The notes under the pieces: model-generated
Told to the model about the DNA's origin: nothing
Seen by the model: only the letters and a program-made list of their open reading frames with translations
The model's database searches: none
Assembly: GCF_030028105.1 (NCBI RefSeq)
Contig: NC_092383.1
Coordinates: forward strand, 96,929,604 to 96,993,603
Direction: 5' to 3'
DNA: 64,000 nucleotides
Origin: Mobula birostris
Lineage: Eukaryota
Program-made: the position numbers and the translations under genes
Shown: in pieces, positions 650 to 41,929 of the stretch
Layout of the letters: every line of letters starts with the position of its first letter
Position numbering within the stretch: position 1 is the first letter of the stretch

Positions 650-1129
650 GTCAGAACAACAAAGACCTCAACATAATCAAGACAGAAGAACTCGTTGTTG
701 ACCCAAGGAAGTGTGTGTGTGTAGACAACCCTGTCCTGATCAAAACAGCTACTGTAGAGATGGTTGACAGATTTGAAGCAGACATCCTTATCAACAGCAT
801 AGTCTCCTGGTCTCTCCAACTCACACAGTGACCAAGAAAGCACGTCAACCCAAATTGAATAAAAGTGATCAATACAAAGAGAGTTTAACAATCCCCGTGA
901 CCCCAAATGAGACACTGAACACAAAGTGAAAACCCACTTTGTTCAAAGACAAACAATTAGACATGAAAAGTTCACAATCGAAGGAACACTACATACCCGT
1001 GAGGTGACACTGAGAAAATACAATCCACATACAAACTGATAAAATCCCTTTCTTCTTTAAAAACAACCCATAGCTCTGACACATACGTCTTACTCAAATT
1101 TCCCATTGTGTGGTACATGTTCTTTCTCT

Positions 1130-1181
1130 CTCTCGCACACACACACACTCAGAGACAGAAACACCACAAACTGACACACAG

Positions 1182-1226
<45 letters not shown>

Positions 1227-1345
1227 ATTGCGCATGCTTACACACATGTGCGGACTCACACACGCACAGACGCACACACAAATGCGCACACGTGCACAGA
1301 CACAGACACAGAGGCACAGACACACTCACATGCAAACACTCACAC
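1130..1345. repeat. (CA)n-rich microsatellite / degenerate CA repeat
   Basis: Visible CA runs. The counterpart (TG)n lies at about 40470-40650. Confidence 0.9.
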
Positions 1346-1350
1346 TCTCT

Positions 1351-1613
1351 ATCACCTATCACCTGTCCAGCTCCTGGCTCCATCCCTCCCCCTCCTGTCT
1401 ACTCCTATCATTTTGGATCTCCCCCTCCCCCTCCAACTTTCAAATCCCTTACTCACTCTTCCTTCAGTTAGTCCTGACGAAGGGTCTCAGCCTGAAACGT
1501 CGACTGCACCTCTTCCTAGAGATGGTGCCTGGCCTGCTGCGTTCACCAGCAACTTTTATGTGTGTTGCTTGAATTTCCAGCATCTGCAGAATTCCTGTTG
1601 TTTGTGTTTTTAA
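1351..1613 (+). mobile_element. Penelope-like element 3' terminal fragment with 13-bp TSD
   Basis: Matches the terminal repeat of the Penelope at 23236-25827. It is flanked by actcacactctct at 1338-1350 and 1614-1626, and is absent from the homologous site near 40480. Confidence 0.8.
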
Positions 1614-3989
1614 ACTCACACTCTCTGCTCTGTTGTTCCATTGTGTGATCTGGGTTCACAAACACTTTGCCGAGCTCGTGTCAACATGACGAGCAGGAGC
1701 AGGAAGCAGACGTGCTACCATTGAACCAGACAACATGTTCAAATGATCTTGCTGAAACATTTTCTTGCTATTTTCCTTGATCTCCTTAATATCTAGAAAT
1801 CTATCAATGAAAGAAGAATTTCCAGATCACCGGAGAATCCCAGTGATTTACCACAGTATGCCGGCTGGCTTCGTAATGGCCTGGTATGGGAACACTATGT
1901 ATTTGAATGGAAAATCCTACAAAATGTACTGAATATGGTCCAGTACATCATGGATAAAACCTTCCCAGCCACTGAAAGCAGCTACATGAAACATTGCCAT
2001 AATCAAAGATCCTCACCACCCAGGCCATGCTCTTTTCTCACTGCTGTCATCAGGTAGAAGGTACAAGTGCCTCAGGACCTACACGACCAGGTTCAAGAAC
2101 AGGTTATTTTTTGATATTTATTTATATTTGCATTTTCACAGTTTGCTGTCTATTGACCCTGTTTACAGTTACTGTTCTATAGATTTGCTAAGTATGCCCG
2201 CAGAGAAAGAATCTCAGGGTTGTATGAGGTGACATATCTCTACTCTGATAATAAAACTTATTTTGAACTTTTTGAATAGAGGCCTAGTCTATTACCCACA
2301 CTAGTGACATGTCAGACCCACCACATCAGAAACCAGTCTGGTGAATCTTTGTGATAATTCCCCTTCAGCATCCATTTCTCACCCATTATCACAGATTCCA
2401 ACATTGTCCCCGCTCCCAGTGTCAGCTGGGGAGATGTGTGGTTCCCAGTTTTCTCTCTCTCCCTCCTTTTTGAAACAGTCTGTAGGATCCATTCCTGAAA
2501 CTGTAGAGTTTGCCAGGTGATAACCAGAAAGTTGAGTAACTCTACTGACACCTTGTCACAGACTCCGGGATGGAGATCATCAGGCCTGTGTCAATTATCC
2601 ATTTTCGTGATGTTATTTCATCATTGACGCTGATTAATTTTATTTCTACACTTGCATTCAACACTTGTCTATCCTGTATTTCTGGCAGGTTTTTGTGTGT
2701 TCCACAAAGACACACAAAAAGCCATGGTTATTTCCTCTACTGTTCCTTCATTCCCCATTACAAAGACCCACGTCTGTCTGTAAGGGAACTACAGTTTTAC
2801 CTGCTGCTGTGTTTGTTTCATGTCCTGATTCCGGCTCTCACAGTCTGTTTTTAATATCCTTCAACTTTCCATTTTCGCTTTCTTCAACGATATACCTGTT
2901 ACCCTTTGCTGTGTTCGTAATCAGTCTCAATCCTCAGACTTATGACTCATTCCACAGGTTAACAACCATTTCTGGCAATGATGTCAGGATTTTCTTTATC
3001 ATTCTGTCTCACTGCTTGTGTGTCCATTATTGTGATTTGGGCTATTGACAGATCGACAGTCTGTCTGCCGAGAGAGAGTGAAAACCAGCACTTGGGACCA
3101 AAAACGAGGATGACTGTTAACAATTTCCACTCTCTTTCTGCATTCCAGTGCCCCTCCACCACTTCCTGCCCCCACCATCCACCATTCCTACAGCGATTCC
3201 CCATCAGGATCTTTTCCCATGAAATATCTCCAGACCAGATCCCAGTTCCTGGGTTCTGAGGGGTCTTGGGTCACATGTACTGAATTCCACATCTCTGCCA
3301 AACCTTCCTAATCCTGTGAACAACTGATACCTTTTTCTCAAGCTCCGTTTCCAGAATTAGAAGCAGGATGGTTCTATGGCTACAGAAAGAGTCAATCCTC
3401 TGTCCCAATACCCACCAGTAACCAAACTTTTCTTGCTCTCCATGTCAAACTCGTGTTTTATGAGAGTGTGACAGGAGAAGCAGCTTCACTGCGTCCAACC
3501 TACACTCTCCTTGCGCTGGTAGTGTGGGACCCAGAAATGCCCAAGTCCAGAAAGTAACAGCGAACCTGGAGAGAAGGATGTTAAAGACAAAGACTTGCTC
3601 TGAATCAAACTTACAGAGTGAGGCGCAGAGAGTTAGCCAGCAGGAGGTCAGCAGATGCCTGGTGTTCATTGTTCTCACAGAACAGTGTAGACGTTGGTGG
3701 GCGGGCTGCACAAAGCTTCCTCTCCTAGTCGGTACGTTGTGAAGAGCAGTTGACAAGAAAGTAGGTGTTGTGCAAAAGGTGAAATACAGAGGTGTGATCA
3801 CAAGCAGAAAGCCACAGCGCTCGATGTCACGAGCGGACTGACTGATATCAGTATTTCACCCCACACCAAATAAGAACAATAAAATCAGGAGGATTTTTGG
3901 TCCCTTGTTCCTGCTCCACAATCAATGAGACTCTGACTGATCTTTTATCTCATCACCACAGTCCTGACCAGAAGAATAGAAAAGCCAAC

Positions 3990-4205
3990 ATAAAGTGGTG
4001 GATATGGCCCAGTCCATCACAAGAAAAACCCTCCCCACCACTGAGCAGATCTACAAGGAGCACTGCGACAAGAAAGCAACGTGCATTATCAAGGACCCCG
4101 ACCATCCAGTCCATAATCTCCTTTCATTGCTGCTGTCAGAAAGGAGGTACGGACCTCAGGTTCCACACCACCAGGTTCAGGAACAGTTACACATCAGACT
4201 CCTGA
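3990..4205 (+). mobile_element. Rex1/Babar-type LINE 3' ORF remnant (copies also at 9590-9810 and 35010-35230, minus strand)
   Basis: Peptide AQSITRKTLPTTEQIYKEHCDKKATCIIKDPDHPVHNLLSLL..GRRY resembles the C-terminus of Rex/Babar RT. Related fragments (IKTEELVVDPRK) lie at about 655-880. Confidence 0.6.
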
Positions 4206-5068
4206 ACCAGCGTGGATAACATCACACACCGCCACTCTGAATTGATTCCACAACCTATGGACTCACTTTCAAGGATTTCATGTTGTAGAGCATATGAGGA
4301 GTATTTGATGGCTCTGGGTCTGTACTCGCTGAAATTTGGAAGAATGAGTGGAAATTTCATTGAAACCTATCGAATGTTGAAAGACCTCGGCAGAGGACGT
4401 AAGAGGACACTTCTTATGGTGGAGGGGTGTAGGACCAGAGGACACAGCCTCCAAACAGAGGAACGCCCATTTACCCTGATCCAACACAAACTCTAGTTTA
4501 TTCTCCGTTTGCCTCTTCCTCTGCCCACCTGACCAAACAATCTTATCTCCCCGAAGCCCGAAGCTTTCCTACAACAACCCAAGGGATTGAATCCAGGCCC
4601 TGTGGATTGTCAGTCAGGAGGGGATTAAAAAACTGTAGAACACTGAATGAGCCAGGGACAGGGGAAACAGTAAAAACAAATATATTCTCTGTAGTGGAAG
4701 GAATGGAGGCAGCCATTTTATGTGTGTTCTCTGCGGCCACCATTTTGTGAGCTGGCTCCTCCCCGGGGACGGTTTGATCAGAGCAGCAAAAAGTAGATGC
4801 AGTGGGGTCGACAATCTGATAAATAAGAGATCATTTCCAAATAAAAAGCTCATTTTGATTTCGTCAGACTGACAGGCTTATCAAAGAAACAGCCTGTGTG
4901 ACCTGACAAAGACTGAGCTGCATATCTGGATGAACTGAATTGAACAAAGGAAGTGACATGGGGCAAGAGCAATAAATTAATACTGTTTGTGGCCTTGTGC
5001 CAGATCCAGGGAGAGGCTGGCACAGGTCAGTCAGATGAAACAGAGCCACTGAAATCGAAACACAACAG

Positions 5069-7675
5069 TTTAGAAACATAGAAAATAGGTGCAGGAGTAG
5101 GCCATTTGGCCCTTCGAGCCTGCACCGCCATTTATTATGATCATGGCTGATCAACCAACTCAGAACCCCGCCCCAGCCTTCCCTCCATACCCCCTGACCC
5201 CCGTAGCCACAAGGGCCATATCTAACTCCCTCTTAAATATAGCCAATGAACTGGCCTCAACTGTTTCCTGTGGCAGAGAATTCCACAGATTCACCACTCT
5301 CTGTGTGAAGAAGTTTTTCCTAATCTCGGTCCTAAAAGGCTTCCCCTCTATCCTCAAACTGTGACCCCTTGTTCTGGACTTTCCCAACATCGGGAACAAT
5401 CTTCCTGCATCTAGCCTGTCCAATCCCTTTAGGATCTTATACGTTTCAATCAGATCCCCCCTCAATCTTCTAAATTCCAACGAGTACAAGTCCAGTTCAT
5501 CCAGTCTTTCTTCATATGAAAGTCTTGCCATCCCAGGAATCAATCTGGTGAACCTTCTCTGTACTCCCTCTATGGCAAGGATGTCTTTCCTCAGATTAGG
5601 GGACCAAAACTGCACACAATACTCCAGGTGTGGTCTCACCAAGGCCTTGTACAACTGCAGTAGTACCTCCCTGCTCCTGTACTCAAATCCCCTCGCTATA
5701 AATGCCAGCATACCATTCGCCTTTTTCACCGCCTGCTGTACCTGCATGCCCACTTTCAATGACCGGTGTATAATGACACCCAGGTCTCGTTGCACCTCCC
5801 CTTTTCCTAATCGGCCACCATTCAGATAATAATCTGTTTTCCTATTTTTGCCACCAAAGTGGATAACTCCACATTAAATTGCATCTGCCATGAATTTGCC
5901 CACTCACCCAACCTATCCAAGTCACCCTGCATCCTCTTAGCATCCTCCTCACAGCTAACACTGCCACCCAGCTTCGTGTCATCTGCAAACTTGGAGATGC
6001 TGCATTTAATTCCCTCATCCAAGTCATTAATATATATTGTAAACAACTGGGGTCCCAGCACTGAGCCTTGCGGTACCCCACTAGTCACCGCCTGCCATTC
6101 TGAAAAGGTCCTGTTTATTCCCACTCTTTGCTTCCTGTCTGCTAACCATCTCTCCACCCACACCAATACCTTAGCCCCAATACCGTGTGCTTTAAGTTTG
6201 CACACTAATCTCCTGAGTGGGACCTTGTCAAAAGCCTTCTGAAAATCCAAATATACCACATCCACTGGTTCTCCCCTATCCACTCTACTAGTTACATCCT
6301 CAAAAAACTCTATGAGATTCGTCAGACATGATTTTCCTTTCACAAATCCATGCTGACTTTGTCTGATCATTTCACCGCTTTCCAAATGTGCTGTTATCAC
6401 ATCCTTGAAACTGACTCCAGCAGTTTCCCTACCACCAACGTTAGGCCAACCGGTCTATAATTCCCCGGTTTCTCTCTCCCTCCTTTTTTAAAAAGTGGAG
6501 TTACATTAGCCACCCTCCAATCCTCAGGAACTAGTCCAGAATCTAACGAGTTTTGAAAAATTATCACTAATGCATCCACTATTTCTTGGGCTACTTCCTT
6601 AAGCACCCTGGGATGCAGACCATCTGGCCCTGGGGATTTATCTGCCTTCAATCCCTTCAACTTACCTAACACCACTTCCCTACTAACATGTATTTCGCTC
6701 AGTTCCTCCATCTCACTGGACCCTCTGTCCCCTACTATTTCTGGAAGATTATTTATGTCCTCCTTAGTGAAGACAGAACCAAAGTAATTATTCAATTGGT
6801 CTGCCATGTCCTCGCTCCCCATAATCAATTCACCTGTTTCTGTCTGCAGGGGACCTACATTTGTCTTTACCAGTCTTTTCCTTTTTACATATCTATAAAA
6901 GCATTTACAGTCCGTTTTTATGTTGCCTGCCAGTTTTCTCTCATAATCTTTTTTCCCCTTCCTAATTAAGCCCTTTGTCCTCCTCTGCTGAACTCTGAAT
7001 TTCTCCCAGTCCTCAGGTGAGCCACTTTCTCTGGCTAATTTGTATGCTTCTTCTTTGGAATTGATACTATCCCTAATTTCTCTTGTCAGCCACGGGTGCA
7101 CTACCTTCCTTGATTTATTCTTTTGCCAAACTGGGATGAACATTTGTTGCAGTTCATCCATGCAACCTTTAAATGCTTGCCATTGCATATCCACCATCAA
7201 TCCTTTAAGTGTCATTTGCCAGTCTATCTTAGCTAATTCACATCTCATACCTTCAAAGTTACCCCTCTTTAAGTTCAGAACCTTTGTTTCTGAATTAACT
7301 ATGTCACTCTCCATCTTAATGAAGAATTCCACCATATTATGGTCACTCTTACCCAAGGGGCCTCTCACGACAAGATTGCTAATTAACCCTTCCTCATTGC
7401 TCAAAACCCAGTCCAGAATAGCCTGCTCTCTAGTCGGTTCCTCGACATGTTGGTTCAAAAAACCATCCCGCATACATTCCAAGAAATCCTCTTCCTCAGC
7501 ACCTTTACCAATTTGGTTCACCCAATCTACATGTAGATTGAAGTCACCCATTATAACTGCTGTTCCTTTATTGCACACATTTCTAATTTCCTGTTTAATA
7601 CCATCTCCGACCTCACTACTACTGTTAGGTGGCCTGTACACAACTCCCACCAGCGTCTTCTGCCCCTTAGTGTCC
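5069..7675 (-). mobile_element. CR1 LINE, 5'-truncated, ORF2 (APE endonuclease + RT) broken by frameshifts/stop
   Basis: ORFs 6397..7677, 5822..6400 and 5160..5795 contain VYRPPNS, YLDFQKAFDKV, SGVPQGSVLGP, FADDTKL and LVRPHLEYCVQFW. The 3' (TTTCTA)-type tail lies near 5069-5085. Confidence 0.95.
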
Positions 7676-7684
7676 ACATAGACT

Positions 7685-7860
7685 CCATCTGTGTGGAGTT
7701 TGCATGTTCTCCCAGTGAAGGCTCAGTTTACCCCGGGTGCTCCTATTTCCTCCCAGATTCCAAAGACAGAAGGGTGGTGGGTTAATTGACCACTATAAAT
7801 TGCCCCCACTGAGAGGGTGAGGGGTAGAATGTGGGGGAGGTGATGGGATGAATGAAATGG
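7685..7860 (+). mobile_element. SINE fragment (V-SINE/HE1-like core)
   Basis: gtgtggagtttgcatgttctccc...gggtgctcctatttcctcccagattccaaagac...ggttaattgaccactataaattgccc resembles the conserved core of fish/shark tRNA-derived SINEs. Confidence 0.55.
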
Positions 7861-8717
7861 AATCTAAAACCGGGTTTAAACTGGGTTTGCTGGAGTTGTG
7901 AGACAGCAGAACTTCCTGCTGCCCACCTGTATGTGTTTTCTCTCTCACTCCAGAGACAGCTGGACTCCAGCACCATTTTCTGTTTCACAGCCTCAACCAC
8001 TTCCTGCCACCATGTTACAACTTTGCAAGACTTTCACCAAGGTCACACACTTCTTGTGTCGCTGAAACCCTTCATTCGTATTCTCTGCCTTGTCGATTAA
8101 ACTGTTGTGTTTCGATTTCAGTGGCTCTGTTTCATCTGACTCACCTGTGCCAGCCTCTCACTGGATCCGGCACAAGGCCACAAACAGTATTAATTTATTG
8201 CTCTTGCCCCATGTCACTTCCTTTGTTCAACCCAGTTCATCCAAATACGCAGCTCAGTCTTCCTCAGGTCACACAGGCTGTTTCTTTGATAAGCCTGTCA
8301 GTCTGACAAAATCAAAAACAGCTTTTTATTTGGAAATGATCTCTTATTTATCAGATTGTTGACCCCACTGCATCTACTTTTTGCTGCTCTGATGAAACCG
8401 TCCCCGGGGGGGAGCCAGCTCACAAAATGGTGGCCACAGAGACACACATAAGATGGCTGCCTCCATTCCTTCCATTACAAGAATATATTTGTTTTTACTG
8501 TTTCCCCTGTCCCTGGCTCATTCAGTGTTCTACAGTTTTTTAATCCCCTCCTGACTGACAATCCACAGGGCCAGCATTCAATTCCTTGCTTTGTTGTACG
8601 AAATCTTCAGACTTCGGGGAGATGAGATTGTTTGATCAGGTGGGCAGAGGAAGAGGCAAATGGAGAATAAAATAGAGTTTGTGTCAGATCAGGTAAATTG
8701 ACGTTCTTCTTCGGAGG

Positions 8718-9344
8718 AACTATTCCTCTATTCCTCTGTTGGTTTTTGGTCGGGCGCTGGACGCTCGGAGAGATTAGGCTGGGGGCAGGCGCCTGGCACT
8801 TGTACTCATGACACGGGTCTATCACTGTATAACAACGAGGTATAGCTCTGCTGGGGACCTGTTTGTCACTATAACAGGGTAGAGGACTTGGCCGGCTCCC
8901 CCACCAGACTTCGTCTGGTGAGGAGGGTGTGAGGACACCCAGCAGGACTAAAAAAAAACAAGACCTGACAAAGGGCGGATGAGCTCCTTGTGAGCCAACG
9001 GCCATCTTCCGTGGAAGAGATTAAAGCCTCACCACGTATCTACGAATCGTTTGCTACGCACCTAGTTAGAAGAGACATGATGAGCTTGGGCGCTGCACCG
9101 TGTGCCTGGACCTGCCCAAGGCCACCGCCTGAGGAAGGGCCGAGCTCGAAGAAGCAGCCGTGGCTGGAGGCCGACACAGCCTCGGGCACAAGTTCGGCAG
9201 GGGGGGCGGCGGGCAGTGCCAAGGCGGCCAGCGAGAACAAACTGGAGGAGAGGCTGTACTCGGTGCTGTCGCAAGATGGAAAAAGATGGAGGTGCATAGC
9301 TGCCAACCCCAGATTCGAATGGCACCCGCTGACTGACTGACAGA
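8718..9344 (+). mobile_element. Chimeric non-autonomous RTE-like retroposon carrying host gene fragment
   Basis: TSD ttcggagg at 8710-8717 and 9345-9352. The empty site is present in copies 1 and 3. The 3' end QDGKRWRCIAANP plus a (TGAC)n tail resembles an RTE terminus. Confidence 0.7.
9092..9269 (+). pseudogene. CYHR1: Captured, order-swapped fragment of CYHR1/ZFTRAF1 5' coding region
   Basis: 9125-9269 encodes PPEEGPSSKKQPWLEA...[12 protein letters not shown] and 9094-9123 encodes [10 protein letters not shown]. In CYHR1/ZFTRAF1 as recalled, these are contiguous as [21 protein letters not shown]. The segment is GC/CpG-rich relative to its flanks. Confidence 0.8.
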
Positions 9345-12300
9345 TTCGGAGGCTGTGTCCTCTGGTCCTACACCCCTACACCATAAGAAGCGTTCTCTTA
9401 TGTCCTCCTCTGTCGAGGTCTTTCAACATTGGATAGGTTTCATTGAAATTTACACTCATTCTTCTAAATTTCAGTGAGTACAGACCCAGAGCCATCAAAT
9501 GCTCCTCATATGCTCTACAACATGAAATCCTTGAAAGTGAGTCCATCGATTGTGGAATCAATTCAGAGTGGCGGTGTGTGAAGTTATCCACGCTGGTTCA
9601 GGAGTCTGATGTGTAACTGTTCCTGAACCTGGTGGTGTGGAACCTGAGGTCCGTACCTCCTTTCTGACAGCAGCAATGAAAGGAGATTATGGACTGGATG
9701 GTCGGGGTCCTTGATGATGCACGTTGCTTTCTTGTCGCAGTGCTCCTTGTAGATCTGCTCAGTGGTGGGGAGGGTTTTTCTTGTGATGGACTGGGCCATA
9801 TCCACCACTTTATGTTGGCTTTTCTATTCTTTTGGTCAGGACTGTGGTGATGAGATAAAAGATCAGTCATAGTCTCATTGATTGTGGAGCAGGAACAAGG
9901 GGCCAAAAAATCCTCCTGATTTTATTGTTCTTATTTGGTGTGAGGTGAAATACTGACATCAGTCAGTCCGCTCGTGACGTCGAGCGCTGTGGCTTTCTGC
10001 TTGTGATCACACCTCTGTATTTCACCTTCTGCACAACACCTACTTTCTTGTCGACTGCTCATCACAACGTACCGACTAGGAGAGGAAGCTTTGTGCAGCC
10101 CGCCCACCAACGTCTACACTGCTCTGTGAGAACAATGAACACCAGGCATCTGCTGACCTCCTGCTGGCTAACTCTCTGCGCCTCACTCTGTAAGTTTGAT
10201 TCAGAGCAAGTCTTTGTCTTTAACATCCTTCTCTCCAGGTTCGCTGTTACTTTCTGGACTTGGGCATTTCTGGGTCCCACACTACAAGGGCAAGGAGCGT
10301 GTAGGTTGGACACAGTGAAGCTGCCTCTCCTGTCACACTCTCAAAAAACGCGAGTTTGACATGGAGAGCAAGAAAAGTTTGGTTACGGGTGGGTATTGAG
10401 AGAGAGGATTGGCTTTTTCTGTAGCCATAGAACCATCCTGCTTCTAATTCTGGAAATGGAGCTTGAGAAACAGTTATGAGTTGTTCACAGGATTGGGAAG
10501 GATTGGCAGAGATGTGGAATTCAGTACATGTGACCCAAGACGCCTCAAAACCCAGAAACTGGGATCTGGTCTGGAGATGTTTCATGGGAAAAGATCCTGA
10601 TGGGGAATCGCTGTAGGAATGGTGAATGGTGTGGGCAGGAAGTGGGGGAGGGGCACTGGAAAGGAGAAAGAGAGTGGAAATTGTTAAGTCATCTTTGTTT
10701 TTGGTTCCAAGTCATGGTTTCCTCTCTCTCGGCAGACGGACTGTCGATCTGTCAATAGCCCAAATCACAATAATGGACATACAAGCAGTGAGACAGAATG
10801 ATAAAGAAAATCCTGATATCATTGCCCGAAATGGTTGTTAACCAGCAGAATGAGTCATAAACCTGAGGATTGAGATTGATTACGAACACAGCAAAGGGTC
10901 ACAGATAAATCGTTGAATAAAGCGAAAATGGAAAGTTGGAGGATATTAAGAGCCAACTATGAGAGCCGGAATCAGGACATGAAACAAACACAGCAGCAGG
11001 TACAACTGTAGTTCCCTTACAGACAGACGTGGGTCTTTGTAATGGGGAATGAAGGAACAGTAGAGGAAATAACCATGGCTTTTTGTGTGTCTTTGTGGAA
11101 CACACAAAATCCTGCCAGAAATACAGGATAGACAAGTGTTGAATGCTAGTGTAGAAATAAAATCAATCAGCGTCAATGATGAAATAACATCATGAAAATG
11201 GATAATTGACACAGGCCTGATGATCTCCATCCCGGAGTCTGTGACAAGGTGTCAGTAGAGTTACTCAACTTCCTGGTTATCATCTGGCAAACTCTACAGT
11301 TTCAGGAATGGTTCCAACAGACTGTTTCAAAAAGGAGGGAGAGAGAGAAAACTGGGAACCACACAACTCTCCAGCTGACACTGGGAGCGGGGACAATGTT
11401 GGAATCTGTGATAATGGGTGAGAAATGGAAGCTGAAGGGGAATTATCACAAAGATTCACCAGACTGGTTTCTGATGTGGTGGGTCTGACATGTCACTAGT
11501 GTGGGTAATAGACTGGGCCTCTATTCAAAAAGTTCAAAATAAGTTTTATCAGAGTAGAAATATGTCACCTCATACAACCCTGAGATTCTTTTTCTGCAGG
11601 CACATTTAGCAAATCTATAGAACAGTAACTGTAAACAGGGTCAATAGACAACAAACTGCGCAAATGCAAATATAAATAAATATCAATAAATAACCTGTTC
11701 TTGAACCTGGTGGTGTACATCCTGATCACTTTTATTCAATTTGGGTTGACGTGCTTTCTTGGTCACTGTGTGAGTTGGAGAGACGAGGAGACTATGCTGT
11801 TGATAAAGATGTCTGCTTCGAATCTGTCAACCATCTCCACAGTAGCTGTTTTGATCAGGACCGGGTTGTCTACACACATGCACTTCCTTGGGTCAACAAC
11901 TAGATCTTCTGTCTTGATTATGTTGAGGTCTATGTTGTTCTGACACCATGACAAAAGCATCATGATCACTTTCCTGCAGAGTGAACTCTCACATATGATC
12001 TTCAGTAGTTTGTTCAGATTTAGACAAATTCAGTTTGTTCTCCTCCTGGTTATCGAGACCCCTCTCCCCTTCCTTGTTGCTCCTCTTCAACCTTCCAGAT
12101 TTCCCAGCATTGGGGTCCTCCTCCCAACACAGTTTTATCGAACTTAAACTCAGTCTACCTCCCTCGTGATTGGATTCAGTGGAATTCTGATCACAGTCTG
12201 TCCCAGTGGAACAGTGCTCTCCTTCTCCAGTACTAATGCCAGTGTCACAGGAGCTGAAAGCCACACCAGACTCTGAGTCAGTCCTCCCTGATCCCATTAA

Positions 12301-20191: not shown

Positions 20192-20989
20192 GTAATGACA
20201 GACACATTACCCCTGGAAAGAGGCCACTGTGGGTCACTCACCCTCCTTGGTGCAGACTGAACATAAGGCCTACATGTAATCTGCACAATCCCAGGATCAA
20301 CCACAGGTCCCCGTCACCGGAGATCGTTCCAACCACCACTGCGGAACTCAGCAGCGCACACACGGAGGCACAGCAAGATCCCACGTACCACTGAGGAGTC
20401 AATTGAAACTTTGCCTCAGTGATCTCCAGGTCTGGTCTGGCAGATCTAACAGTAATTGTACACTCCACATACACACACACAGTTACTGAGCACATTGTCC
20501 CCACACTCCCAGTCACTGGGCTACACTGACACCAACCCCACACACTGTCACTGCGATACACGGTCACCAACACACCGAGTCATTGAGGTACATTCTCCCC
20601 CCCACACCCAGTCACTGGGGTACCCTGTCCCCACACTCCCAGTCACTGGGTTACCCTGTCCCTATACATGCAGTTATGCCCAGTAGTATGTGCATTTCTG
20701 ATGATCAGTTATGGATTTAATATTCGTGTCGATGGGCAGTGTGTGAGTTCATTCAGAATGCACTGAGAATGAGGCCATGCTGATGCTAGGTTAGTATCAT
20801 TGTTTGACAGTCGATTGGGTGATCCGAGTTTCCATCATTGTGTGTCGTTTTGCATGTCCAGGTCTTTTGTGTCCATGTGTCACGTTTTGATGTGCCCAAT
20901 CTCCATGTCTCCCCTCTCCAGAGTCCTTGTCTCTGTATCTCCCTGCTTCCATATCCTAACTCCGCCCTGGTCTGTAGCTCCCTAACTGG

Positions 20990-21455
20990 GCCCTGGTCTG
21001 TATCTCATTGTCTTGATGTTCTGGTCTGTATCTCCCTGCCTCTGTGTCCTGGTCTGTATTTCCCTGTCTCTGTGTCCTGGTCTGTATTTCCATCTCTCTG
21101 GGTCCTGCTCTGTACCATCTGTCTATGGTTTCTGTTTCTGTGTCCTGGTCTGTATCTCTCTGTCCCTGTGCCCTGGTCTGTATTACCCTGTCTCTGTGTC
21201 CTGGTCTGTATTTCCCTGTCCCTGAGTCCTGGTCTGTATTACCCTGTCTCTGTGTCCTGGTCTCTATTTCCTGTCCCTGGGTCCTGGTCTCTATTTCCTG
21301 TCCCTGGGTCCTGGTCTGTATTACCCTGTCTGTGTCCTGGTCTCTATTTCCTGTCCCTCGGTCCTGGTCTGTATTCCCCTGTCCCTGGGTCCTGGTCTGT
21401 ATTACTCTGTCTGTGTCCTGGTCTGTATTTCCTGTCCCTGGGTCCTGTCTCTGGG
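20990..21455. repeat. Pyrimidine-rich tandem repeat (about 20-28 bp unit, ccctgtc..gtcctggtctgtatt); older, more diverged counterpart about 55000-55310
   Basis: Directly visible. It produces the low-complexity ORFs 20838..21470 and 21044..21508. Confidence 0.85.
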
Positions 21456-28453: not shown

Positions 28454-31340
28454 TCTGAGGTGTATATATTTCAATGCTAGGAGTATTGCGGGGAAGGCGG
28501 ATGAGTTGAGGGCGTGGATTGACACGTGGAATTATGATGTTGTAGCAATTAGTGAAACTTGGTTACAGGAGGGGCAGGACTGGCAGCTTAATATTCCAGG
28601 GTTCCGATGTTTCAGATGTGATCGAGGCAGAGGAATGAAAGGTGGGGGAGTAGTATTGCTTGTTAGGGAAAATATTACAGCAGTGCTCAGGCAGGACAGA
28701 TTAGAGGGCTTGTCTACTGAGTCCTTATGGGTGGAGCTGAGAAACAGGAAAGGTATGGCCACATTAGTGGGATTGTATTACAGACCACCCAATAGTCAAC
28801 GAGACTTGGAAGAGCAAATCTGCAGAGAGATAGCAGGGAACTGCAGGAAACATAAAGTTGTGGTGGTAGGGGATTTTAATTTTCCATATATTGATTGGGA
28901 CTCCCATACTGTTAGGGGCCTAGATGGTTTAGAGTTTGTAAAATGTGTTCAGGAAAGTTTTCTAAATCAATATATAGAGGGACCAACTAGAGGGGATGCA
29001 ATATTGGATCTACTGTTAGGAAACGAATCAGGGCAAGTGACAGAAGTCTGTGTAGGGGAGCACTTTGGTTCCAGTGATCATAACACCATTAGTTTCAATT
29101 TGATCATGGACAAGGATAGATCTGGTCCTAGGGTTGAGGTTCTGAACTGGAAGAAGGCCAAATTTGAAGAAATGAGAAAGGATCTAAAAAGCGTGGATTG
29201 GAACAGGTTGTTCTCTGGCAAAGATGTGATTGGTAGGTGGGAAGCCTTCAAAGGGGAAATTTTGAGAGTGCAGAGTTTGTATGTTCCTGTCAGGATTAAA
29301 GGCAAATTAAATAGGAATAAGGAACCTTGGTTCTCAAGGGATATTGCAACTCTGATAAAGAAGAAGAGGGAGTTGTATGAAATGTATAGGAAACAGGGTA
29401 AATCAGGTGCCTGAGGAGTATAAGAAGTGCAAGAAAACACTAAAGAAAGAAATCAGGAGGGCTAAAAGAAGACATGAGGTTGCCTTGGCAATCAAAGTGA
29501 AGGATAATCCAAAGAGCTTTTACAAGTATATTAAGAGCAAAAGGATTGTAAGGGATAAAATTGGTCCTCTTGAAGATCAGAGTGGTCGGCTTTGTGCGGA
29601 ACCAAAGGAAATGGGGGAGATCTTAAATAGTTTTTTTGCATCTGTATTTACTAAGGAAGCTGGCATGAAATCTATGGAATTGAGGGAATCAAGTAGTGAG
29701 ACCATGGAAACTGTACAGATTGAAAAGGAGGAGGTGCTTGCTGTCTTGAGGAAAATTAAAGTGGATAAATCCCTGGGACCTGACAGAGTGTTCCCTCGGA
29801 CCTTGAAGGAGACTAATGTTGAAATTGCGGGGGCCCTGGCAGAAATATTTAAAATGTCGCTGTCTACGGGTGAAGTGCCGGAGGATTGGAGAGTGGCTCA
29901 TGTTGTTCCGTTGTTTAAAAAAGGATCGAAAAGTAATCCGGGAAATTATAGGCCGGTGAGTTTAACGTCAGTAGTAGGTAAATTATTGGAAGGAGTACTA
30001 AGAGACAGAATCTACAAGCATTTGGATAGACAGGGGCTTATTAGGGAAAGTCAACATGGCTTTGTGCATGGTAGGTCATGTTTGACCAATCTGTTGGAGT
30101 TTTTCGAGGAGGTTACCAGGAAAGTGGATGAAGGGAAGGCAGTGGATATTGTCTACATGGACTTCAGTAAGACCTTTGACAAGGTCCCGCATGGGAGGTT
30201 AGTTAGGAAAATTCAGTCGCTAGGTATACATGGAGAGGCGGTAAATTGGATTAGACATTGGCTCGATGGAAGAAGCCAGAGAGTGGTGGTAGAGAATTGC
30301 TTCTCTGAGTGGAGGCCTGTGACTAGTGGTGTGCCACAGGGATCAGTGCTGGGTCCATTGTTATTTGTCATCTATATAAATGATCTGGATGACAATGTGG
30401 TAAATTGGATCAGCAAGTTTGCTGATGATACAAAGATTGGAGGTGTAGTAGACAGTGAGGAAGGTTTTCAGAGCCTGCAGAGGGACTTGGACCAGCTGGA
30501 AAAATGGGCTGAAAAATGGCAGATGGAGTTTAATACTGACAAGTGTGAGGTATTGCACGTTGGAAGGACAAACCAACGTAGAACATATAGGGTTAATGGT
30601 AAGGCACTGAGGAGTGCAGTGGAACAGAGGGATCTCGGAATACAGATACAAAATTCCCTAAAAGTGTCTTCACAGGCAGATAGGGTCGTAAAGAGAACTT
30701 TTGGTACATTGGCCTTTATTAATCGAAGTATTGTGTGTAAGAGCTGGAATGTTATGATGAGGTTGTATAAGGCATTGGTGAGGCCGAATCTGGAGTATTG
30801 TGTTCAGTTTTGTTCACCAAATTACAGGAAGGATATAAATAAGGTTGAAAGAGTGCAGAGAAGGTTTACAAGGATGTTGCCAGGACTTGAGAAACTCAGT
30901 TACAGAGAAAGGTTGAATAGGTTAGGACTTTATTCCCTGGAGCGTAGAAGAATGAGGGGAGATTTGATAGAGGTATATAAAATTATGATGGGTATAGATA
31001 GAGTGAATGCAAGCAGGCTTTTTCCACTGAGACAAGGGGAGAAAAAAACCAGAGGACATGGGCTAAGGGTGAGGGGGGAAAAGTTTAAAGGGAACGTTAG
31101 GGGGGGCTTCTTCACACAGAGAGTGGTGGGAGTATGGAATGAGCTGTCAGACGAGGTGGTAAATGCGGGTTCTTTTTTAACATTTAAGAATAAATTGGAC
31201 AGATACATGGATGGGAGGTGTATGGAGGGATATGGTCTGTGTGCAGGTCAGTGGGACTAGGCAGAAAATGGTTCGGCACAGCCAAGAAGGGCCAAAGGGC
31301 CTGTTTCTGTGCTGTAGTTTCTATGGTTTCTATGGTTTCT
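28454..31340 (+). mobile_element. CR1 LINE, near-complete ORF2 (one frameshift near 29400), inserted in the myosin fragment
   Basis: ORFs 28506..29414 and 29377..31260 cover the endonuclease through RT. The 3' tail is (TTTCTATGG)n, and the 5-bp TSD aaact lies at 28449-28453 and 31341-31345. Confidence 0.95.
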
Positions 31341-31830
31341 AAACTCCCTTCCCTGGACTCTCAGTTTTCTGTTGGCCTTAGTCAGAACACTTCCCTGATC
31401 TTCCCCAACTTGTAAGTCTTCCAATCTTTTCTGAATCGACGTCTTGGGTTTCCGCTGATCCCTTCGAAGGTGGGTCATTGTTTCTTCTCGCTGGATTAAT
31501 TCATCAGTACATGACCGCAGTGTCGGCTCGGAATTCCGCTGCTCCTTCTCCACGTTGACGAGCGTGAATTCCAAGTCTGCAATGGTCGCCCCACAAGTGC
31601 GGCACTCAGTCTCCGGCCAGCATTTCTGAGCACTCAGTTCAGTGGTGCAAATCCCCTCTCTCCCTTGTGTCTCATTCAGATTGACGACCTGGGTTTCCAT
31701 CCCCAGGTCCTCCACCGTCTGCTCCAACACCAGGAAGTTCAACTGGTATGTCGGGTCAATTTTCTCACATTGCACCAAACTCCTCTGGCCAAAAACTCCT
31801 CCACATTTGACACTTCGCTTCGGTCACCCG
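31341..31830 (-). pseudogene. Captured myosin heavy-chain S2 fragment, 5' part
   Basis: ETQVVNLNE..ELSAQK..ETEC..IADLEFTLVNVEKEQ..LEDLQVGEDQGSVLTKANRKL aligns without gaps to myosin [55 protein letters not shown]. The upstream boundary is approximate. Confidence 0.85.
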
Positions 31831-33284: not shown

Positions 33285-36200
33285 ATGTAGCCTCCCCGGC
33301 CACCCTCAGGGTTGCTCAGCTTGCCATGGCCTAGGGAAACATCCCTCGGCCCCACAAACTTAGTTTGTGTGGATGCTGTGTGATGTACCCCACCCCACCC
33401 AAATAACAGACAATACACCAGATACGATTAAATGATTTACAGTTTATAGATATTACTGGAACTACATAATTAATAGAGAATAAAATATAAAAGGAAAATA
33501 AAAGGTGCCACACTTATCAAAGTTCAATCTCTTCGTGCACAAACAGTTGGAGCTCAGGACCCTTCTTCTTCACCCTGAGACCCGTCGGACCACCTCGACC
33601 GGCCGCCTGGGACCAACAATAGTGGTCGAACAGACGCTCCACATGAGTCCATCTCCGTCTCCTTTCCTCGCGGAACGCCCTCCTCGGGGTACGACCCCGT
33701 TAGCGGACTCACAGCACCTGGTCCATCCTCTGTCTCTCTCTCTCCTGCCTTCTCCCCCCAAAACCCTGTGCATACAATCTCTTACAGACACCCCACAGGC
33801 ATAACAATTAACCCAATTGGTTCATTTGTCCTCCTATCAGTAGATAATCCAAAACAAACTGCCAGCACAAGAACTTTCTCAGCGTTTAACATAACAAAGA
33901 AGCATTCCCAAGTATAACATAACAAAGAAGCCATTTTAATAAGCCCCTACAGTAACAAAAAAGACGAAACCCCCTTACATGTATGTGTTTTCTCTCTCAC
34001 TCCAGAGACAGCTGGACTCCAGCACCATTTTCTGTTTCACAGCCTCAACCACTTCCTGCCACCATGTTACAACTTTGCAAGACTTTCACCAAGGTCACAC
34101 ACTTCTTGTGTCGCTGAAACCCTTCATTCGTATTCTCTGCCTTGTCGATTAAACTGTTGTGTTTCGATTTCAGTGGCTCTGTTTCATCTGACTGACCTGT
34201 GCCAGCCTCTCACTGGATCTGGCACAAGGCCACAAACAGTATTAATTTATTGCTCTTGCCCCATGTCACTTCCTTTGTTCAACCCAGTTCATCCAAATAC
34301 GCAGCTCAGTCTTCGTCAGGTCGCACAGGCTGCTTCTTTGATAAGCCTGTCAGTCTGACGAAATCAAAATGAGTTTTTTATTTGGAAATGTTCTCTTATT
34401 TATCAGATTGTCGAACCCACTGCATCTACTTTTTGCTGCTCTGATCAAACTGTCCCCGGGGAGGAGCCAGCTCACAAAATGGTGGCCGCAGAGAACACAC
34501 ATAAAATGGCAGCCTCCATTCCTTCCACTACAAAGAATATATTTGTTTTTACTGTTTCCCCTGTCCCTGGCTCATTCAGTGTTCTACAGTTTTTTAATAC
34601 CTTCATGACTGACAATCCACAGGGTGAGGATTTAATCCCTTGGGTTGTTGTATGAAAGCTTCAGACTTCAGGGAGATGAGATTGTTTGGTCAGGTGTGCA
34701 GAGAAAGAGTCAAATGGAGAATAAAATGCAGTTTGTGTTGGATCAGGGTAAATGGACGTTCCTCTATTCGGAGGCTGTGTCCTCTGGTCCTACACCCCTT
34801 CACCATAAGAAGCATTTTCTTATGTCCTCTGTCGCGGTCTTTCAACATTCGATAGGTTTCAATGAAATTTCCACTCATTCTTCCAAATTTCAGTGAGTAC
34901 AGGCCCAGAGCCATCAAATGCTCCTCATATGCTCCACAACATGAAATCCTTGAAAGTGAGTCCATAGGTTGTGGAATCAATTCAGAGTGGCGGTGTGTGA
35001 AGTTATCCACGCTGGTTCAGGAGTCTGATGTGTAACTGTTCCTGAACCTGGTGGTGTGGAACCTGAGGTCCGTACCTCCTTTCTGACAGCAGCAATGAAA
35101 GGAGATTATGGACTGGATGGTCGGGGTCCTTGATGATGCACGTTGCTTTCTTGTCGCAGTGCTCCTTGTAGATCTGCTCAGTGGTGGGGAGGGTTTTTCT
35201 TGTGATGGACTGGGCCATATCCACCACTTTATGTTGGCTTTTCTATTCTTTTGGTCAGGACTGCGGTGATGAGATAAAAGATCAGTCATAGTCTCATTGA
35301 TTGTGGAGCAGGAACAAGGGGCCAAAAATCCTCCTGATTTTATTGTTCTTATTTGGTGTGAGGTGAAATACTGACATCAGTCAGTCTGCTTGTGACGTCG
35401 AGCGCTGTGGCTTTCTGCTTGTGATCACACCTCTGTATTTCACCTTTTGCACAACACCTACTTTCTTGTCAACTGCTCTTCACAACGTACTGACTAGGGG
35501 ATGAAGCTTTGTGCAGCCCACCAACATCTATACTGCTCTGTGAGAACAATGAACACCAGGCATCTGCTGATCTCCTGCTGGCTAACTCTCTGTGCCTCAC
35601 TCTGTAAGTTTGATTCAGAGCAAGCCTTTGTCTTTAACATCCTTCTCTCCAGGTTCGCTGTTACTTTCTCGACTCAGGCATTTCTGGGTCCCACACTACC
35701 AGGGCACGGAGAGTGTAGGTTGGGCACAGTGAAGCTGCCTCTCCTGTCACACCCTCATAAAACACCAGTTTGACATGGAGAGCAAGAAATGTTTGGTTAC
35801 TGGTGGGTATTGGGACAGAGGATTGGCTTTTTCTGTAGCCATAGAACCATCCTGCTTCTAATTCTGGAAACGGAGCTTGAGAAACAGGTATCAGTTGTTC
35901 ACAGGATTGGGAAGGATTGGCAGGGATGTGGAATTGAGTACATGTGACCCAGGACCCCTCAGAACCCAGGAACTGGGATCTGGTCTGGAGATGTTTCATG
36001 GGAAAAGATCCTGATGGGAAATCGCTGTAGAAATGGTGGATGGTGGGGGCAGGAAGTGGTGGAGGGGCACTGGAATGGAGAAAAAGAATGGAAATTGTTA
36101 ACAGTCATCTTCGTTTTTGGTCCCAAGTGCTGGTTTTCACTCTCTCTCGGCAGACAGACTGTCGATCTGTCAATAACTCAAATCACAAAATTGGACATAC

Positions 36201-37162
36201 AAGCAGTGAGAGAGAATGATAAAGAAAATCCTGATATCATTGCCAGAAACGGTTGTTAACCTGCAGAATGAGTCGTAAGCCTGAGGATTGCGATTGATAA
36301 TGAACACAGCAAAGGGTCACAGATATATCGTTGAAGAAAGTGAAAATGGAAAGTTGAAGGATATTAAGGACAGACTGTGAGAGCCGGAATCAGGACATGA
36401 AACAAACACAGCAGCAGGTACAACTGTAGTTCCCTTACAGACAGACGTGGGTCTCTGTTATGGGGAATGAAGGAACAGTAGAGGAAATAACCATGGCTTT
36501 TTGTGTGTCTTTGTGGAACACACAAAAACCTGCCAGAAATACAGGATAGACAAGTGTTGAATGCTAGTGTAGAAATAAAATCAATCAGCGTCAATGATGA
36601 AATAACATCATGAAAATGGATAATTGACACAGGCCTGATGATCTCCATCCCGGAGTCTGTGACAAAGTGTCAGTAGAGTTACTCAACTTCCTGGTTATCA
36701 TCTGGCAAACTCTACAGTTTCAGGAATGGTTCCTACAGACTGTTTCAAAAAGGAGGGAGAGAGAGAAAACTGGGAACCACACATCTCCCCAGCTGACACT
36801 GGGAGCGGGGACAATGTTGGAATCTGTGATAATGGGTGAGAAATGGAAGCTGAAGGGGAATTATCACAAAGATTCACCAGACTGGTTTCTGATGTGGTGG
36901 GTCTGTCATGTCACTAGTGTGGGTAATAGACTGGGTCTCTATTCAAGAAGTTCAAAATAAGTTTTATTATTAGAGTACGTATATGTCATCACATACAACC
37001 CTGAGATTCTTTCTCTGCGGGCATACTGAGCAAATCTATAGAACATGAACTGTAAACAGGATCAATAGACAACGAACTGTGAAAATGCAAATATAAATAA
37101 ATATCAATAAATAACCTATTCTTGAAGCTGGTGGTGTAGGTCCTGAGGCTCTTGTACCTTCT

Positions 37163-40026: not shown

Positions 40027-41929
40027 TTGTACCTTCTACCTGATGATAGCAGTGAGAAAAGAACATGGCCTGGGTGGTGAGGATCTTTGATTATGGCAAT
40101 GTTTCATGTAGAAGCTTTCAGTGGCTGGGAAGGTTTTATCCATGACGTACTGGAACGAATTCACTACATTTTGTAGAAGTTTCCGTTCAAATACATGGTG
40201 TTCCCATACCAGGCCACTATGAAGCCAGCCGGCATACTGTGGTAAATCACTGGGATTCTCCGGTGATCCGGAAATTCTTCTTTCATTGATAGATTTCTAG
40301 ATATTAAGGAGATCAAGGAAAATGGCAAGAAAATGTTTTAGTCAGGAACAGTTGAATATGTTGTGTGGTTCAATAGTGGCACGTCCGCTTCCTGCTCCTG
40401 CTCGTCATGTTGACACGAGCTCAGCAAAGTGTTTGTGAACCCGGATCACACAATGGAACAACAGAGAAGAGAGTGTGAGTGTTTGCATGTGAGTGTGTCT
40501 GCATCTCTGTGTCTGTGTGTGTGCACGTGTGCACATTTGTGTGTGCGTCTGTACGTGTGTGAGTGTGTACATGTGTGTAAGCATGCGCAATTGTCTGTGT
40601 GTGTCTGTTTCTGCGTATCAGTTTGTGTGTCTGGGTGTGTGCGAGAGAGAGAAAGAACATGTACCATACAATGGGAAATTTGAGTAAGGTGTCTGTGTCA
40701 GAACTATGGGTTGTTTTTAAAGAAGAAAGGGATTTTATCAGTTTGTATGTGGATTGTATTTTCTCAGTGTCACCTCATGGGAATGTAGTGTTCCTTCGAT
40801 TGTGAATTTTTCGTGTCTAATGGTTTGTCTTTGAACAAAGTGGGTTTTCAATTTGTGTTCAGTGTCTCATTTGGGGTCACGGGGATTGTTAATCTCTCTT
40901 TGCATTGATCACTTTTATTCAATTTGGGTTGACGTGCTTTCTTGGTCACTGTGTGAGTTGGAGAGACCAGGAGACTATGCTGTTGATAAGGATGTCTGCT
41001 TTGAATCTGCCAACCATCTCTACAGTAGCTGTTTTGATCAGGACAGGGTTGTCTACACACACGCACTTCCTTGGGTCAACAACTAGATCTTCTGTCTTGA
41101 TTATGTTGAGGTCTATGTTGTTGTGACACCATGACAAAAGCATCATGATCACTTTCCTGCAGAGTGAACTCACACATATGATCTTCAGTAGTTTGTTTAG
41201 ATTTAGACAAATTCAGTTTGTACTCTTCCTGGTTATCGAGACCCCTCTCCCCTTCCTTGTTGCTCCTCTTCAACCTTCCAGATTTCCCAGCATTGGGGTC
41301 CTCCTCCCAACACAGTTTTATTGAATTTAAACTCAGTCTACCTCCCTCGTGATTGGATTCAGTGGAATTCTGATCACAGTCTGTCCCAGTGGACCTGTGC
41401 TCTCCTTCTCCAGTACTAATGACAGTGTCAAAGGAACTGAAAGCCACACCAGGCTCTGAGTCACTCCTCCCTGATCCCATTAATCGCGTTATGATGTGTT
41501 TGTGGGTGGGTAATAATACAAAGATTAAGACGTTTGTGGAGAAGAAGAAAAAACTATAGGGAAAGCGGGTGTTGGGGTGTCTCTGACAGAGTGCCATGGG
41601 GATAAGCTGGCTACAAGATTATCTGGTCAATGGGTGACTGGGAGCAGTTGGAACAGGGAGAACATGGACAAAAGGAGATTGACGACAATGTATAGATGTG
41701 AACTATTCAACAGGAAGCCTGGTCTGGTAGGTCAGGCTAGACACCATCTCCACTACCACATCCAGCTAGATTCTCTTACACCCTTCTTAAGCCAATCACC
41801 CCTGGTGGGGCACAGGCTGCTGACAGCAGCTCACTAGACACCTCTATCCATCTAAACAGGGAATTCTGACCCTCTCGCACAACAGAAACTGTAGCATTGG
41901 ACTGTTCACCCTCTTTGCTCCAAGGTCAT

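What the first reader, a model, noticed from the sequence alone, without database searches (positions are those of the whole stretch)
8718..9344. TSD-flanked RTE-like retroposon carrying an order-swapped piece of CYHR1/ZFTRAF1
Seen: a 627-bp insert unique to copy 2, with an 8-bp TSD. [10 protein letters not shown] (9094-9123) lies upstream of PPEEG...[10 protein letters not shown] (9125-9269), with gctg overlap at the would-be native junction. An RTE-like C-terminus and (TGAC)n tail follow. Established (from recall): the native order is [21 protein letters not shown]. Inference: a bipartite non-autonomous RTE derivative acquired host coding sequence by template switching. The permutation could reflect a circular or tandem RNA intermediate, or two switches. 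It is the second host-gene capture in this window.
Basis: partly seen in the sequence, partly recalled or inferred. Interest (0 to 1): 0.7.

Follow-up and report, generated by a model that had tools for sequence, protein, structure and literature searches.

The report
Retroposon copy carrying order-swapped host exon piece
A 627-base jumping-gene copy that landed in one of three duplicated segments carries 178 bases from the first exon of a host zinc-finger gene (ZFTRAF1/CYHR1) with its two halves exactly swapped; the swap is real, but this copy most likely inherited it from its parent element and did not capture it here.

Summary
A 627-bp insert (8718-9344) with an exact 8-bp target-site duplication is missing from the two paralogous copies of the surrounding segment in this window.

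It carries 178 nt (9092-9269) of host coding sequence in swapped order. Two metagenome contigs read [10 protein letters not shown] directly followed by [11 protein letters not shown], so the native order is now shown by a tool. Put back in native order, the window's two pieces give one open 60-aa frame. They also give a gap-free 62-nt match (57/62) across the joint.

Both breakpoints lie inside exon 1, so a canonical back-spliced circRNA is not the source.

The RTE label rests only on a stop codon inside a (TGAC)3 tail and a remembered C-terminal motif. No repeat library was available.

The scan has found this same swapped piece before on other DNA of this genome: four other notes, one of them 101 kb upstream, all inside copies of a LINE. 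So this is most likely an ordinary retroposed copy of a family that captured the piece once.

After that I sent none of those letters to any search tool on purpose.

The site is ordinary. The family-level event is mildly interesting.

The parts
8710..8717 (+). Left target-site duplication, ttcggagg
   Evidence: Identical to 9345-9352. Copy 2 lacks 2 nt just upstream of it compared with both empty sites.
8718..8968 (+). 5' part of the insert. Non-coding, with stops in all three forward frames. It starts with a short direct repeat (ctattcct twice) and holds an A9 run at 8949-8957.
   Evidence: translations; no Rfam family, including no tRNA, 5S, 7SL or HDV-type match; my loose HDV-type descriptor gave nothing convincing. 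Its origin is open.
8969..9091 (+). Start of the 123-codon open frame of the insert, upstream of the host piece (...LVRRDMMSLG)
   Evidence: Presumed remnant of the element's ORF. No family match.
9092..9124 (+). Host piece B. Natively this is the downstream part (second and third base of a Cys codon, then [10 protein letters not shown]). Here it is read out of its native frame. Positions 9122-9124 (cca) could belong to B or to A.
9125..9269 (+). Host piece A. Natively this is the upstream part (PPEEG...[10 protein letters not shown] plus the first base of the next codon). It is read in its native frame and in frame with the element's ORF.
9270..9340 (+). Element ORF C-terminus (SQDGKRWRCIAANPRFEWHPLTD) and stop codon 9338-9340
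   Evidence: The similarity to RTE/BovB C-termini is from memory only.
9330..9344 (+). 3' tail: (tgac)3 followed by aga. No poly(A).
9345..9352 (+). Right target-site duplication, ttcggagg
34767..34774 (+). Empty target site in paralogous copy 3
4448..4455 (-). Empty target site in paralogous copy 1 (inverted), tttggagg

Best explanation
This is an ordinary retroposed copy of a non-autonomous or internally deleted member of a LINE family. The family is RTE-like: it has no poly(A), a (TGAC)n tail, and an ORF that stops inside the tail. The copy inserted by target-primed reverse transcription into one of three about 95 % identical duplicated segments, after they duplicated, and made a 7-9-bp target duplication.

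Near its 3' end the element carries 178 nt from inside exon 1 of the host gene ZFTRAF1/CYHR1. The piece sits in frame with the element's ORF and is circularly permuted to the base. The natively downstream 33 nt come first and the natively upstream 145 nt follow.

I infer that this cargo was acquired once by a master element and is inherited by every copy longer than about 255 nt, including this one. For that founding event I favour reverse-transcriptase template switching at the GCTG microhomology onto a circular or tandem copy of the exon fragment, with return to the element RNA after one lap. Integration of a small DNA circle into a master copy is nearly as likely.

Shown: the insert, the TSD, the empty sites, the identity of the cargo, its exact permutation and its position within the exon. 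Inferred: inheritance of the cargo, the RTE affiliation, and the founding mechanism.
For: - Insert, TSD and two empty paralogous sites.
- The flanks are 95.0 % and 94.8 % identical to the paralogues, so the insertion is younger than the duplication.
- Native order A then B in two independent contigs.
- Exact un-permutation: a 62-nt gap-free alignment at 57/62 identity across the joint, and one open 60-aa frame.
- The native run GCTG-T-GCTG at the break is also present in L001.
- The L001 exon ends at ...SVYQ|gt, 15 nt past the last base that L001 and piece B share in the alignment, and piece A aligns from about residue 52 of the 96 residues of that exon. The piece is therefore wholly inside the exon.
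- The 123-codon frame runs through both junctions and stops in the (TGAC)3 tail. That fits cargo carried in a working ORF.
- Leads, not tests: notes s1-145109, s1-145151, s1-145216 and s1-145244 report the same 166-178-nt swapped piece inside LINE copies at other places in this genome. One follow-up reports thousands of copies in several species.
- Runs from at least seven organism labels hold part of the 1027-bp stretch. These include very small runs of 71-111 million letters, which would fit a high-copy repeat. Which part they hold is unknown.
Against: - I saw no other copy of the element myself. There is none in the window.
- The protein searches were blank.
- The junction 24-mer is absent from the viral and prokaryote collections, which says nothing about ray genomes.
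- No tool result ties the flanks to RTE.
- The 5' 250 nt match nothing. No ribozyme head was found in this copy, although notes from other windows describe such heads on this genome's RTE copies.
- The in-frame junctions would arise by chance about one time in nine.
Confidence: 0.7

Rival explanations
1. De novo capture at this insertion. During the retroposition that created this copy, the reverse transcriptase switched from the element RNA to ZFTRAF1 RNA and back. The chimera would then be unique to this locus.
For: Only one copy is in the window. The insert is young relative to the duplication. CpG observed/expected in the insert is 0.56-0.68 against 0.34-0.44 in the flanks, as expected for young sequence.
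Against: Four other scan notes report the same swapped piece with the same length (178 nt) elsewhere in this genome, inside LINE copies. These are leads I could not check. Independent events would not repeat the same two breakpoints. The cargo sits in frame inside an ORF, which fits propagation by a coding master.
Confidence: 0.1
2. The founding event was at DNA level. A small extrachromosomal DNA circle (microDNA) made from GC-rich ZFTRAF1 exon 1 was opened once and ligated into a break in a genomic master copy of the element. That master then amplified.
For: A circle opened once gives exactly one unit in permuted order, with nothing lost or gained, as seen here. The 178-nt size, 69 % GC and origin in a first exon fit what I remember of microDNA. 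The B|A joint has up to 3 nt of possible microhomology (cca).
Against: Germline re-integration of microDNA is, to my knowledge, barely documented, whereas LINE reverse-transcriptase template switching is well documented (PMC2104539; bioRxiv 10.1101/2025.02.02.635956). This reading concerns the family's origin and cannot be told from the RNA route using this copy. It does not apply to this site, where the piece lies inside a TSD-flanked retroposon.
Confidence: 0.3
3. The source was a canonical back-spliced circRNA of ZFTRAF1, as in circRNA-derived pseudogenes.
For: The order is non-colinear, as in circRFWD2-derived pseudogenes (PMC4897178).
Against: The B-to-A joint is not exon end joined to exon start. 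In L001 the exon runs 15 nt past the last base it shares with piece B in the alignment, and then shows a gt donor. Piece A starts in the middle of the coding part of the same first exon. A first exon has no acceptor site to back-splice to.
Confidence: 0.03
4. The match is chance similarity, or a conserved RING-finger motif of some unrelated gene, and there is no permutation.
For: Only about 62 nt are conserved between the window and L001. The gene name rests on memory, because Pfam, PDB, the Atlas and both protein searches gave no named hit.
Against: 57 of 62 nt and 21 of 21 residues are identical across the restored joint. The un-permuted piece is one open frame whose low-complexity N-terminal part resembles that of L001.
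Confidence: 0.02

Closest known systems
circRNA-derived pseudogenes (Dong et al. 2016, PMC4897178), e.g. the 33 mouse circRFWD2 copies flanked by LTR sequence
   Same: Host gene sequence sits in non-colinear order in the genome, present in many copies, and is linked to retroelements.
   Different: Their joint is a back-splice junction between whole exons. Here both breakpoints lie inside one first exon. The piece is only 178 nt and is embedded in frame in a LINE-type ORF.
LINE template-switch chimeras: U6/L1 and other bipartite retrocopies, and the tripartite chimeras of Magnaporthe (PMC2104539); LINE-1 recombination with diverse RNAs (bioRxiv 10.1101/2025.02.02.635956)
   Same: Host RNA is fused directly to LINE sequence in the same orientation. 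One TSD surrounds the whole chimera. Several template jumps are invoked (titles and abstracts).
   Different: The known chimeras carry the foreign RNA at the 5' side and are usually dead on arrival. Here the host piece is internal, with a return to the same element. It is permuted and apparently heritable within a family.
RTE-clade LINEs and the SINEs derived from them (Malik and Eickbush 1998, from memory)
   Same: No poly(A), a short tandem-repeat tail, almost no 3' UTR, and short deletion derivatives moved in trans.
   Different: No endonuclease or reverse-transcriptase sequence is present in this copy, and no library match could be made. Host coding cargo inside the ORF is not a described feature of RTE, as far as my searches go.
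microDNA / small eccDNA from GC-rich 5' ends of genes (Shibata et al. 2012, from memory)
   Same: The size (178 nt), the GC-rich first exon as source, and short microhomology at the circle joint.
   Different: Here the piece is not a free integration. It travels inside a retroposon.

Membership tests
Non-LTR retroposon insertion made by target-primed reverse transcription | Short target-site duplication, and an empty site available for comparison | tested here: met
   An 8-bp exact TSD and two empty paralogous sites
RTE-clade LINE or its non-autonomous derivative | No poly(A); a short tandem-repeat tail; very short 3' UTR | tested here: met
   (tgac)3 at 9330-9341, with the stop codon 9338-9340 inside it. 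That this is typical of RTE is from memory.
RTE-clade LINE or its non-autonomous derivative | Sequence similarity to an RTE consensus, or to an RTE ORF with endonuclease and reverse transcriptase | not testable with these tools
   No Dfam or Repbase here. Pfam gave nothing. A phmmer search of 1.8 billion proteins gave 0 hits. The LINEs that are in the window are CR1-like and unrelated.
RTE-clade LINE or its non-autonomous derivative | A 5' head shared with the autonomous element (in this genome reported as an HDV-type ribozyme) | tested here: inconclusive
   Rfam found no HDV-type match at E up to 10. The fold z-score was -0.86. My descriptor scan gave only weak, non-canonical candidates.
ZFTRAF1/CYHR1-derived sequence | Matches the gene's exon 1 around the start of the RING-type finger | tested here: met
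   57 of 62 nt and 21 of 21 aa match L001, which reads on into ...ASVYQ and a gt donor. L002 reads on into CTNGHLMCAGCF. The gene name itself comes from memory and from earlier notes; no tool named it.
Exact circular permutation of a contiguous native segment | The end of the second piece and the start of the first piece abut in the native sequence with no base lost or gained | tested here: met
   A gap-free alignment across the joint against an orthologue. The ray's own gene was not available.
circRNA-derived pseudogene | The non-colinear joint coincides with a back-splice junction (exon 3' end joined to exon 5' end) | tested here: not met
   In L001 the exon runs 15 nt past the last base shared with piece B, and piece A starts inside the coding part of the same first exon. 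This is inferred from an orthologue.
De novo template-switch chimera at this locus | The junctions are unique to this locus | not testable with these tools
Earlier notes report the same piece at four other places.

The most novel reading that the evidence does not exclude
A LINE family of mobulid rays carries, in frame in its ORF, exactly one lap of a 178-nt circle made from inside exon 1 of ZFTRAF1. That would be a fossil showing that a LINE reverse transcriptase (or the repair of a master copy) used a small non-back-splice circle of RNA or DNA as template, and that the chimeric element stayed active and amplified with a host peptide built into its protein.
Probability: 0.3. Interest if true: 0.6.

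Novelty: new variant of a known kind. Interest (0 to 1): 0.33.

Why it matters
At this site, little. It is one more dated presence/absence insertion that marks copy 2 of a local duplication.

At family level the exact one-unit permutation of an intra-exonic fragment is a rare natural record of a circular or tandem nucleic-acid intermediate entering the germline through a retroelement. It is also a case of host coding sequence riding in frame in a LINE ORF. With the full set of copies, one could date the capture. One could also recover the pre-capture element and read the microhomologies that separate the RNA route from the DNA route.

Tried and rejected
There is therefore no depth, copy-number or junction evidence.
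  - After it I gave search tools only letters from 9089 and below or from 9128 and above.
  - One exception was not of my making. The by-place look-up widened my range 9128-9344 to 7628-10844 by itself.
  - The two pairwise alignments with L001 ran in the closed script machine, not in a search tool.
- Searches of the ORF or of piece A all came back blank: Pfam, phmmer against 1.8 billion representatives, the word-indexed protein search with 9128-9337, PDB and the ESM Atlas. The conserved part is too short, and full-length relatives fall outside the length window.
- Rfam returned only sub-threshold chance hits, such as an archaeal C/D-box family at 19.8 bits against a cut-off of 40.
- The search for an HDV-type ribozyme head found nothing convincing.
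- The junction 24-mer was absent from viral contigs and genome contigs. This is uninformative for a ray.
- Of the four contigs, L003 and L004 are chance matches.
- L002 has no intron and a GC-rich upstream frame, so it could be mammalian or human contamination. I read one 99-codon translation and did not save, compare or search it further.
- Rejected readings: a free DNA-circle integration at this site (the piece lies inside a TSD-flanked retroposon), and a tRNA-, 5S- or 7SL-headed SINE (no such match).

Full report
**What is in the sequence**

The window holds three copies of a segment several kilobases long: one inverted at about 650-5072, one at about 7925-12022, and one from 33977. Around the finding, the flanks of copy 2 are 95.0 % identical to copy 1 and 94.8 % identical to copy 3.

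Copy 2 alone carries 627 extra bases, 8718-9344. They are bounded by ttcggagg at 8710-8717 and at 9345-9352. The right flank recurs without the insert at 34767 on the + strand and at 4426-4455 on the - strand. So there is a filled site and two empty sites, and the insertion is younger than the duplication.

Immediately left of the duplication, copy 2 lacks 2 nt that both empty sites have. The duplication can therefore be read as 7 to 9 bp. The window holds no second copy of the insert.

**Anatomy of the insert**

- **8718-8968:** stops in all three forward frames. There is no Rfam match of any kind at E up to 10: no tRNA, 5S, 7SL or HDV-type ribozyme.
- **8969-9340:** one frame is open for 123 codons.
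- **Reading of that frame:** it reads ...LVRRDMMSLG, then 59 codons of foreign sequence, then SQDGKRWRCIAANPRFEWHPLTD and a stop at 9338-9340.
- **Tail:** the stop lies inside a (tgac)3 tail at 9330-9341. There is no poly(A).

**The host piece**

[10 protein letters not shown] is read at 9094-9123. PPPEEG...[10 protein letters not shown] is read in the frame of 9092 and ends at 9268.

To test the remembered native order I scanned metagenome contigs with a degenerate pattern for the ten residues [10 protein letters not shown] only. Two of the four loci are real. L001 and L002 both read ...[11 protein letters not shown] followed at once by [15 protein letters not shown]. The native order is therefore A then B, and the window has B then A.

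In L001 the native DNA reads gtgctgtgctgcacc at the joint, and the exon ends at ...taccag|gtaaac. I joined the window's two pieces in native order: 9122-9269, then 9092-9124.

- They give one open 60-residue frame.
- They give a gap-free 62-nt alignment to L001 across the joint, with 57 of 62 identical.
- They give 21 of 21 identical residues.
- In the order found in the window, only the 31-nt B part aligns.

The host piece is thus 9092-9269, 178 nt, an exact circular permutation. Its opening falls between the two GCTG of the native GCTG-T-GCTG. There is no overlap in the sense of shared bases.

The internal B-to-A joint (9124/9125) can hide up to 3 nt of microhomology (cca).

No tool gave a named hit.

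**Where the piece lies in the gene**

In L001 the exon runs 15 nt past the last base that the window's piece B shares with it in the alignment. Piece A aligns from about residue 52 of the 96 residues encoded by that first exon. Both breakpoints are therefore inside exon 1.

A canonical back-spliced circRNA, the basis of the circRNA-derived pseudogenes of Dong et al. (PMC4897178), requires the swapped joint to be an exon end joined to an exon start. That feature is not met. This is inferred from an orthologue, because the ray's own gene was not available.

**Is the carrier an RTE?**

The tail and the stop codon inside it fit what I remember of RTE-clade LINEs. The ...DMMSLG / ...QDGKRWR... motifs recall BovB-type C-termini. 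These are recollections, not tests.

No repeat library was on hand. Pfam, a full phmmer pass over 1.8 billion proteins and the word search were blank. The LINEs in the window are CR1-like, with (tttctatg)-type tails, and are unrelated.

I found no HDV-type ribozyme at the 5' end. Rfam gave none, the fold z-score was -0.86, and a loose descriptor scan gave only non-canonical candidates. Notes from other windows describe such heads on this genome's RTE copies. 'RTE-like' is plausible, and 'bipartite head plus tail' is open.

**Was the capture made here?**

This is the key point of interpretation, and I could not test it directly. The look-up of sequencing runs listed holders from at least seven organism labels. 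They include very small runs of 71-111 million letters that hold about a fifth of the sampled words. That would fit a high-copy repeat, but I cannot say which part of the stretch they hold.

From then on I worked beside those places.

- Search tools received only letters from 9089 and below or from 9128 and above.
- The by-place look-up widened my range on its own.
- The two comparisons with L001 ran in the closed script machine.

The junction 24-mer is absent from the viral and prokaryote collections, which says nothing about rays.

What remains are leads from this scan. Notes s1-145109, s1-145151, s1-145216 (101.5 kb upstream of this window) and s1-145244 describe the same swapped ZFTRAF1 piece, 166 or 178 letters long, at other places of this genome, which those notes call the manta ray. 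Three follow-ups place it inside copies of a LINE, and one reports thousands of copies in several related species.

The identical length of 178 nt, and a cargo that sits in frame in an ORF, both fit a single old capture. By chance both junctions would be in frame about one time in nine.

Any copy longer than about 255 nt would inherit it, since the cargo ends 75 nt from the 3' end. I therefore read this locus as an ordinary retroposed copy of that family, with confidence about 0.7. I give a capture at this event about 0.1.

**How the founding event may have worked (inference)**

Three routes can give one exact unit in swapped order.

1. **Template switching on a circle or tandem.** The reverse transcriptase, copying the element RNA from its 3' end, switches at a GCTG microhomology onto a circular or tandem copy of the exon fragment. 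It runs one lap and returns to the element RNA at the same motif.
2. **A small DNA circle.** A circle from the GC-rich first exon (69 % GC) is opened once and joined into a genomic master copy.
3. **Several switches on linear mRNA fragments.** An end-to-end jump from the 5' end of one fragment to the 3' end of another makes the B-to-A joint.

Multiple template jumps by LINE enzymes are documented (PMC2104539; bioRxiv 10.1101/2025.02.02.635956). Route 2 explains the exactness most simply, but as far as I know it is little documented in the germline. This copy cannot separate the routes. The sequence of cargo-free relatives at the insertion point would.

**Comparison and novelty**

The kind is known: LINE-borne chimeras with host RNA, and non-colinear host fragments amplified with retroelements. 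The variant appears unreported in the papers I could search. It is an intra-exonic, base-exact permutation, internal to the element and in frame. No paper links CYHR1 with a retrotransposon in this sense.

The scan has already reported it on other DNA of this genome, so this site adds one dated copy and an independent check of the native order.

**Other handling notes**

L002 might be mammalian or human contamination. It has no intron at the conserved position and a GC-rich upstream frame. I read one 99-codon translation and left it at that.

**Verdict**

The site is ordinary and the family-level event is of moderate interest.

Noticed in passing
window 650-5072 (-), 7925-12022 (+), 33977-41205 (+): Three copies of a multi-kilobase segment at about 95 % identity, the first inverted relative to the other two. 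Copies 1 and 2 form an inverted pair around a CR1-like LINE.
   Followed up: partly
window 5080-7700 (-) and 28506-31345 (+): Two CR1-like LINEs with endonuclease and reverse-transcriptase domains (Exo_endo_phos, RVT_1) and (tttctatg)-type tails. They are unrelated to the insert.
   Followed up: partly
window 8700-8717 compared with 34750-34774 and 4448-4475: Copy 2 lacks 2 nt (at) just at the left edge of the target duplication, compared with both empty sites. This could be a small target deletion made during insertion, or a later change.
   Followed up: no
window 20967-21341 and 55048-55242: A minisatellite with a 28-nt period, present in both large duplicates (family D1).
   Followed up: no
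L001 (MDSQ01167767.1) 591-879: This metagenome contig carries an animal ZFTRAF1-like first exon of 96 codons at 65 % GC, followed by a gt donor and an AT-richer intron. It is host or eukaryote DNA inside a metagenome record.
   Followed up: partly
window 8763-8771: The insert contains gctcggagag, which resembles its own target duplication ttcggagg. This is probably chance.
   Followed up: no
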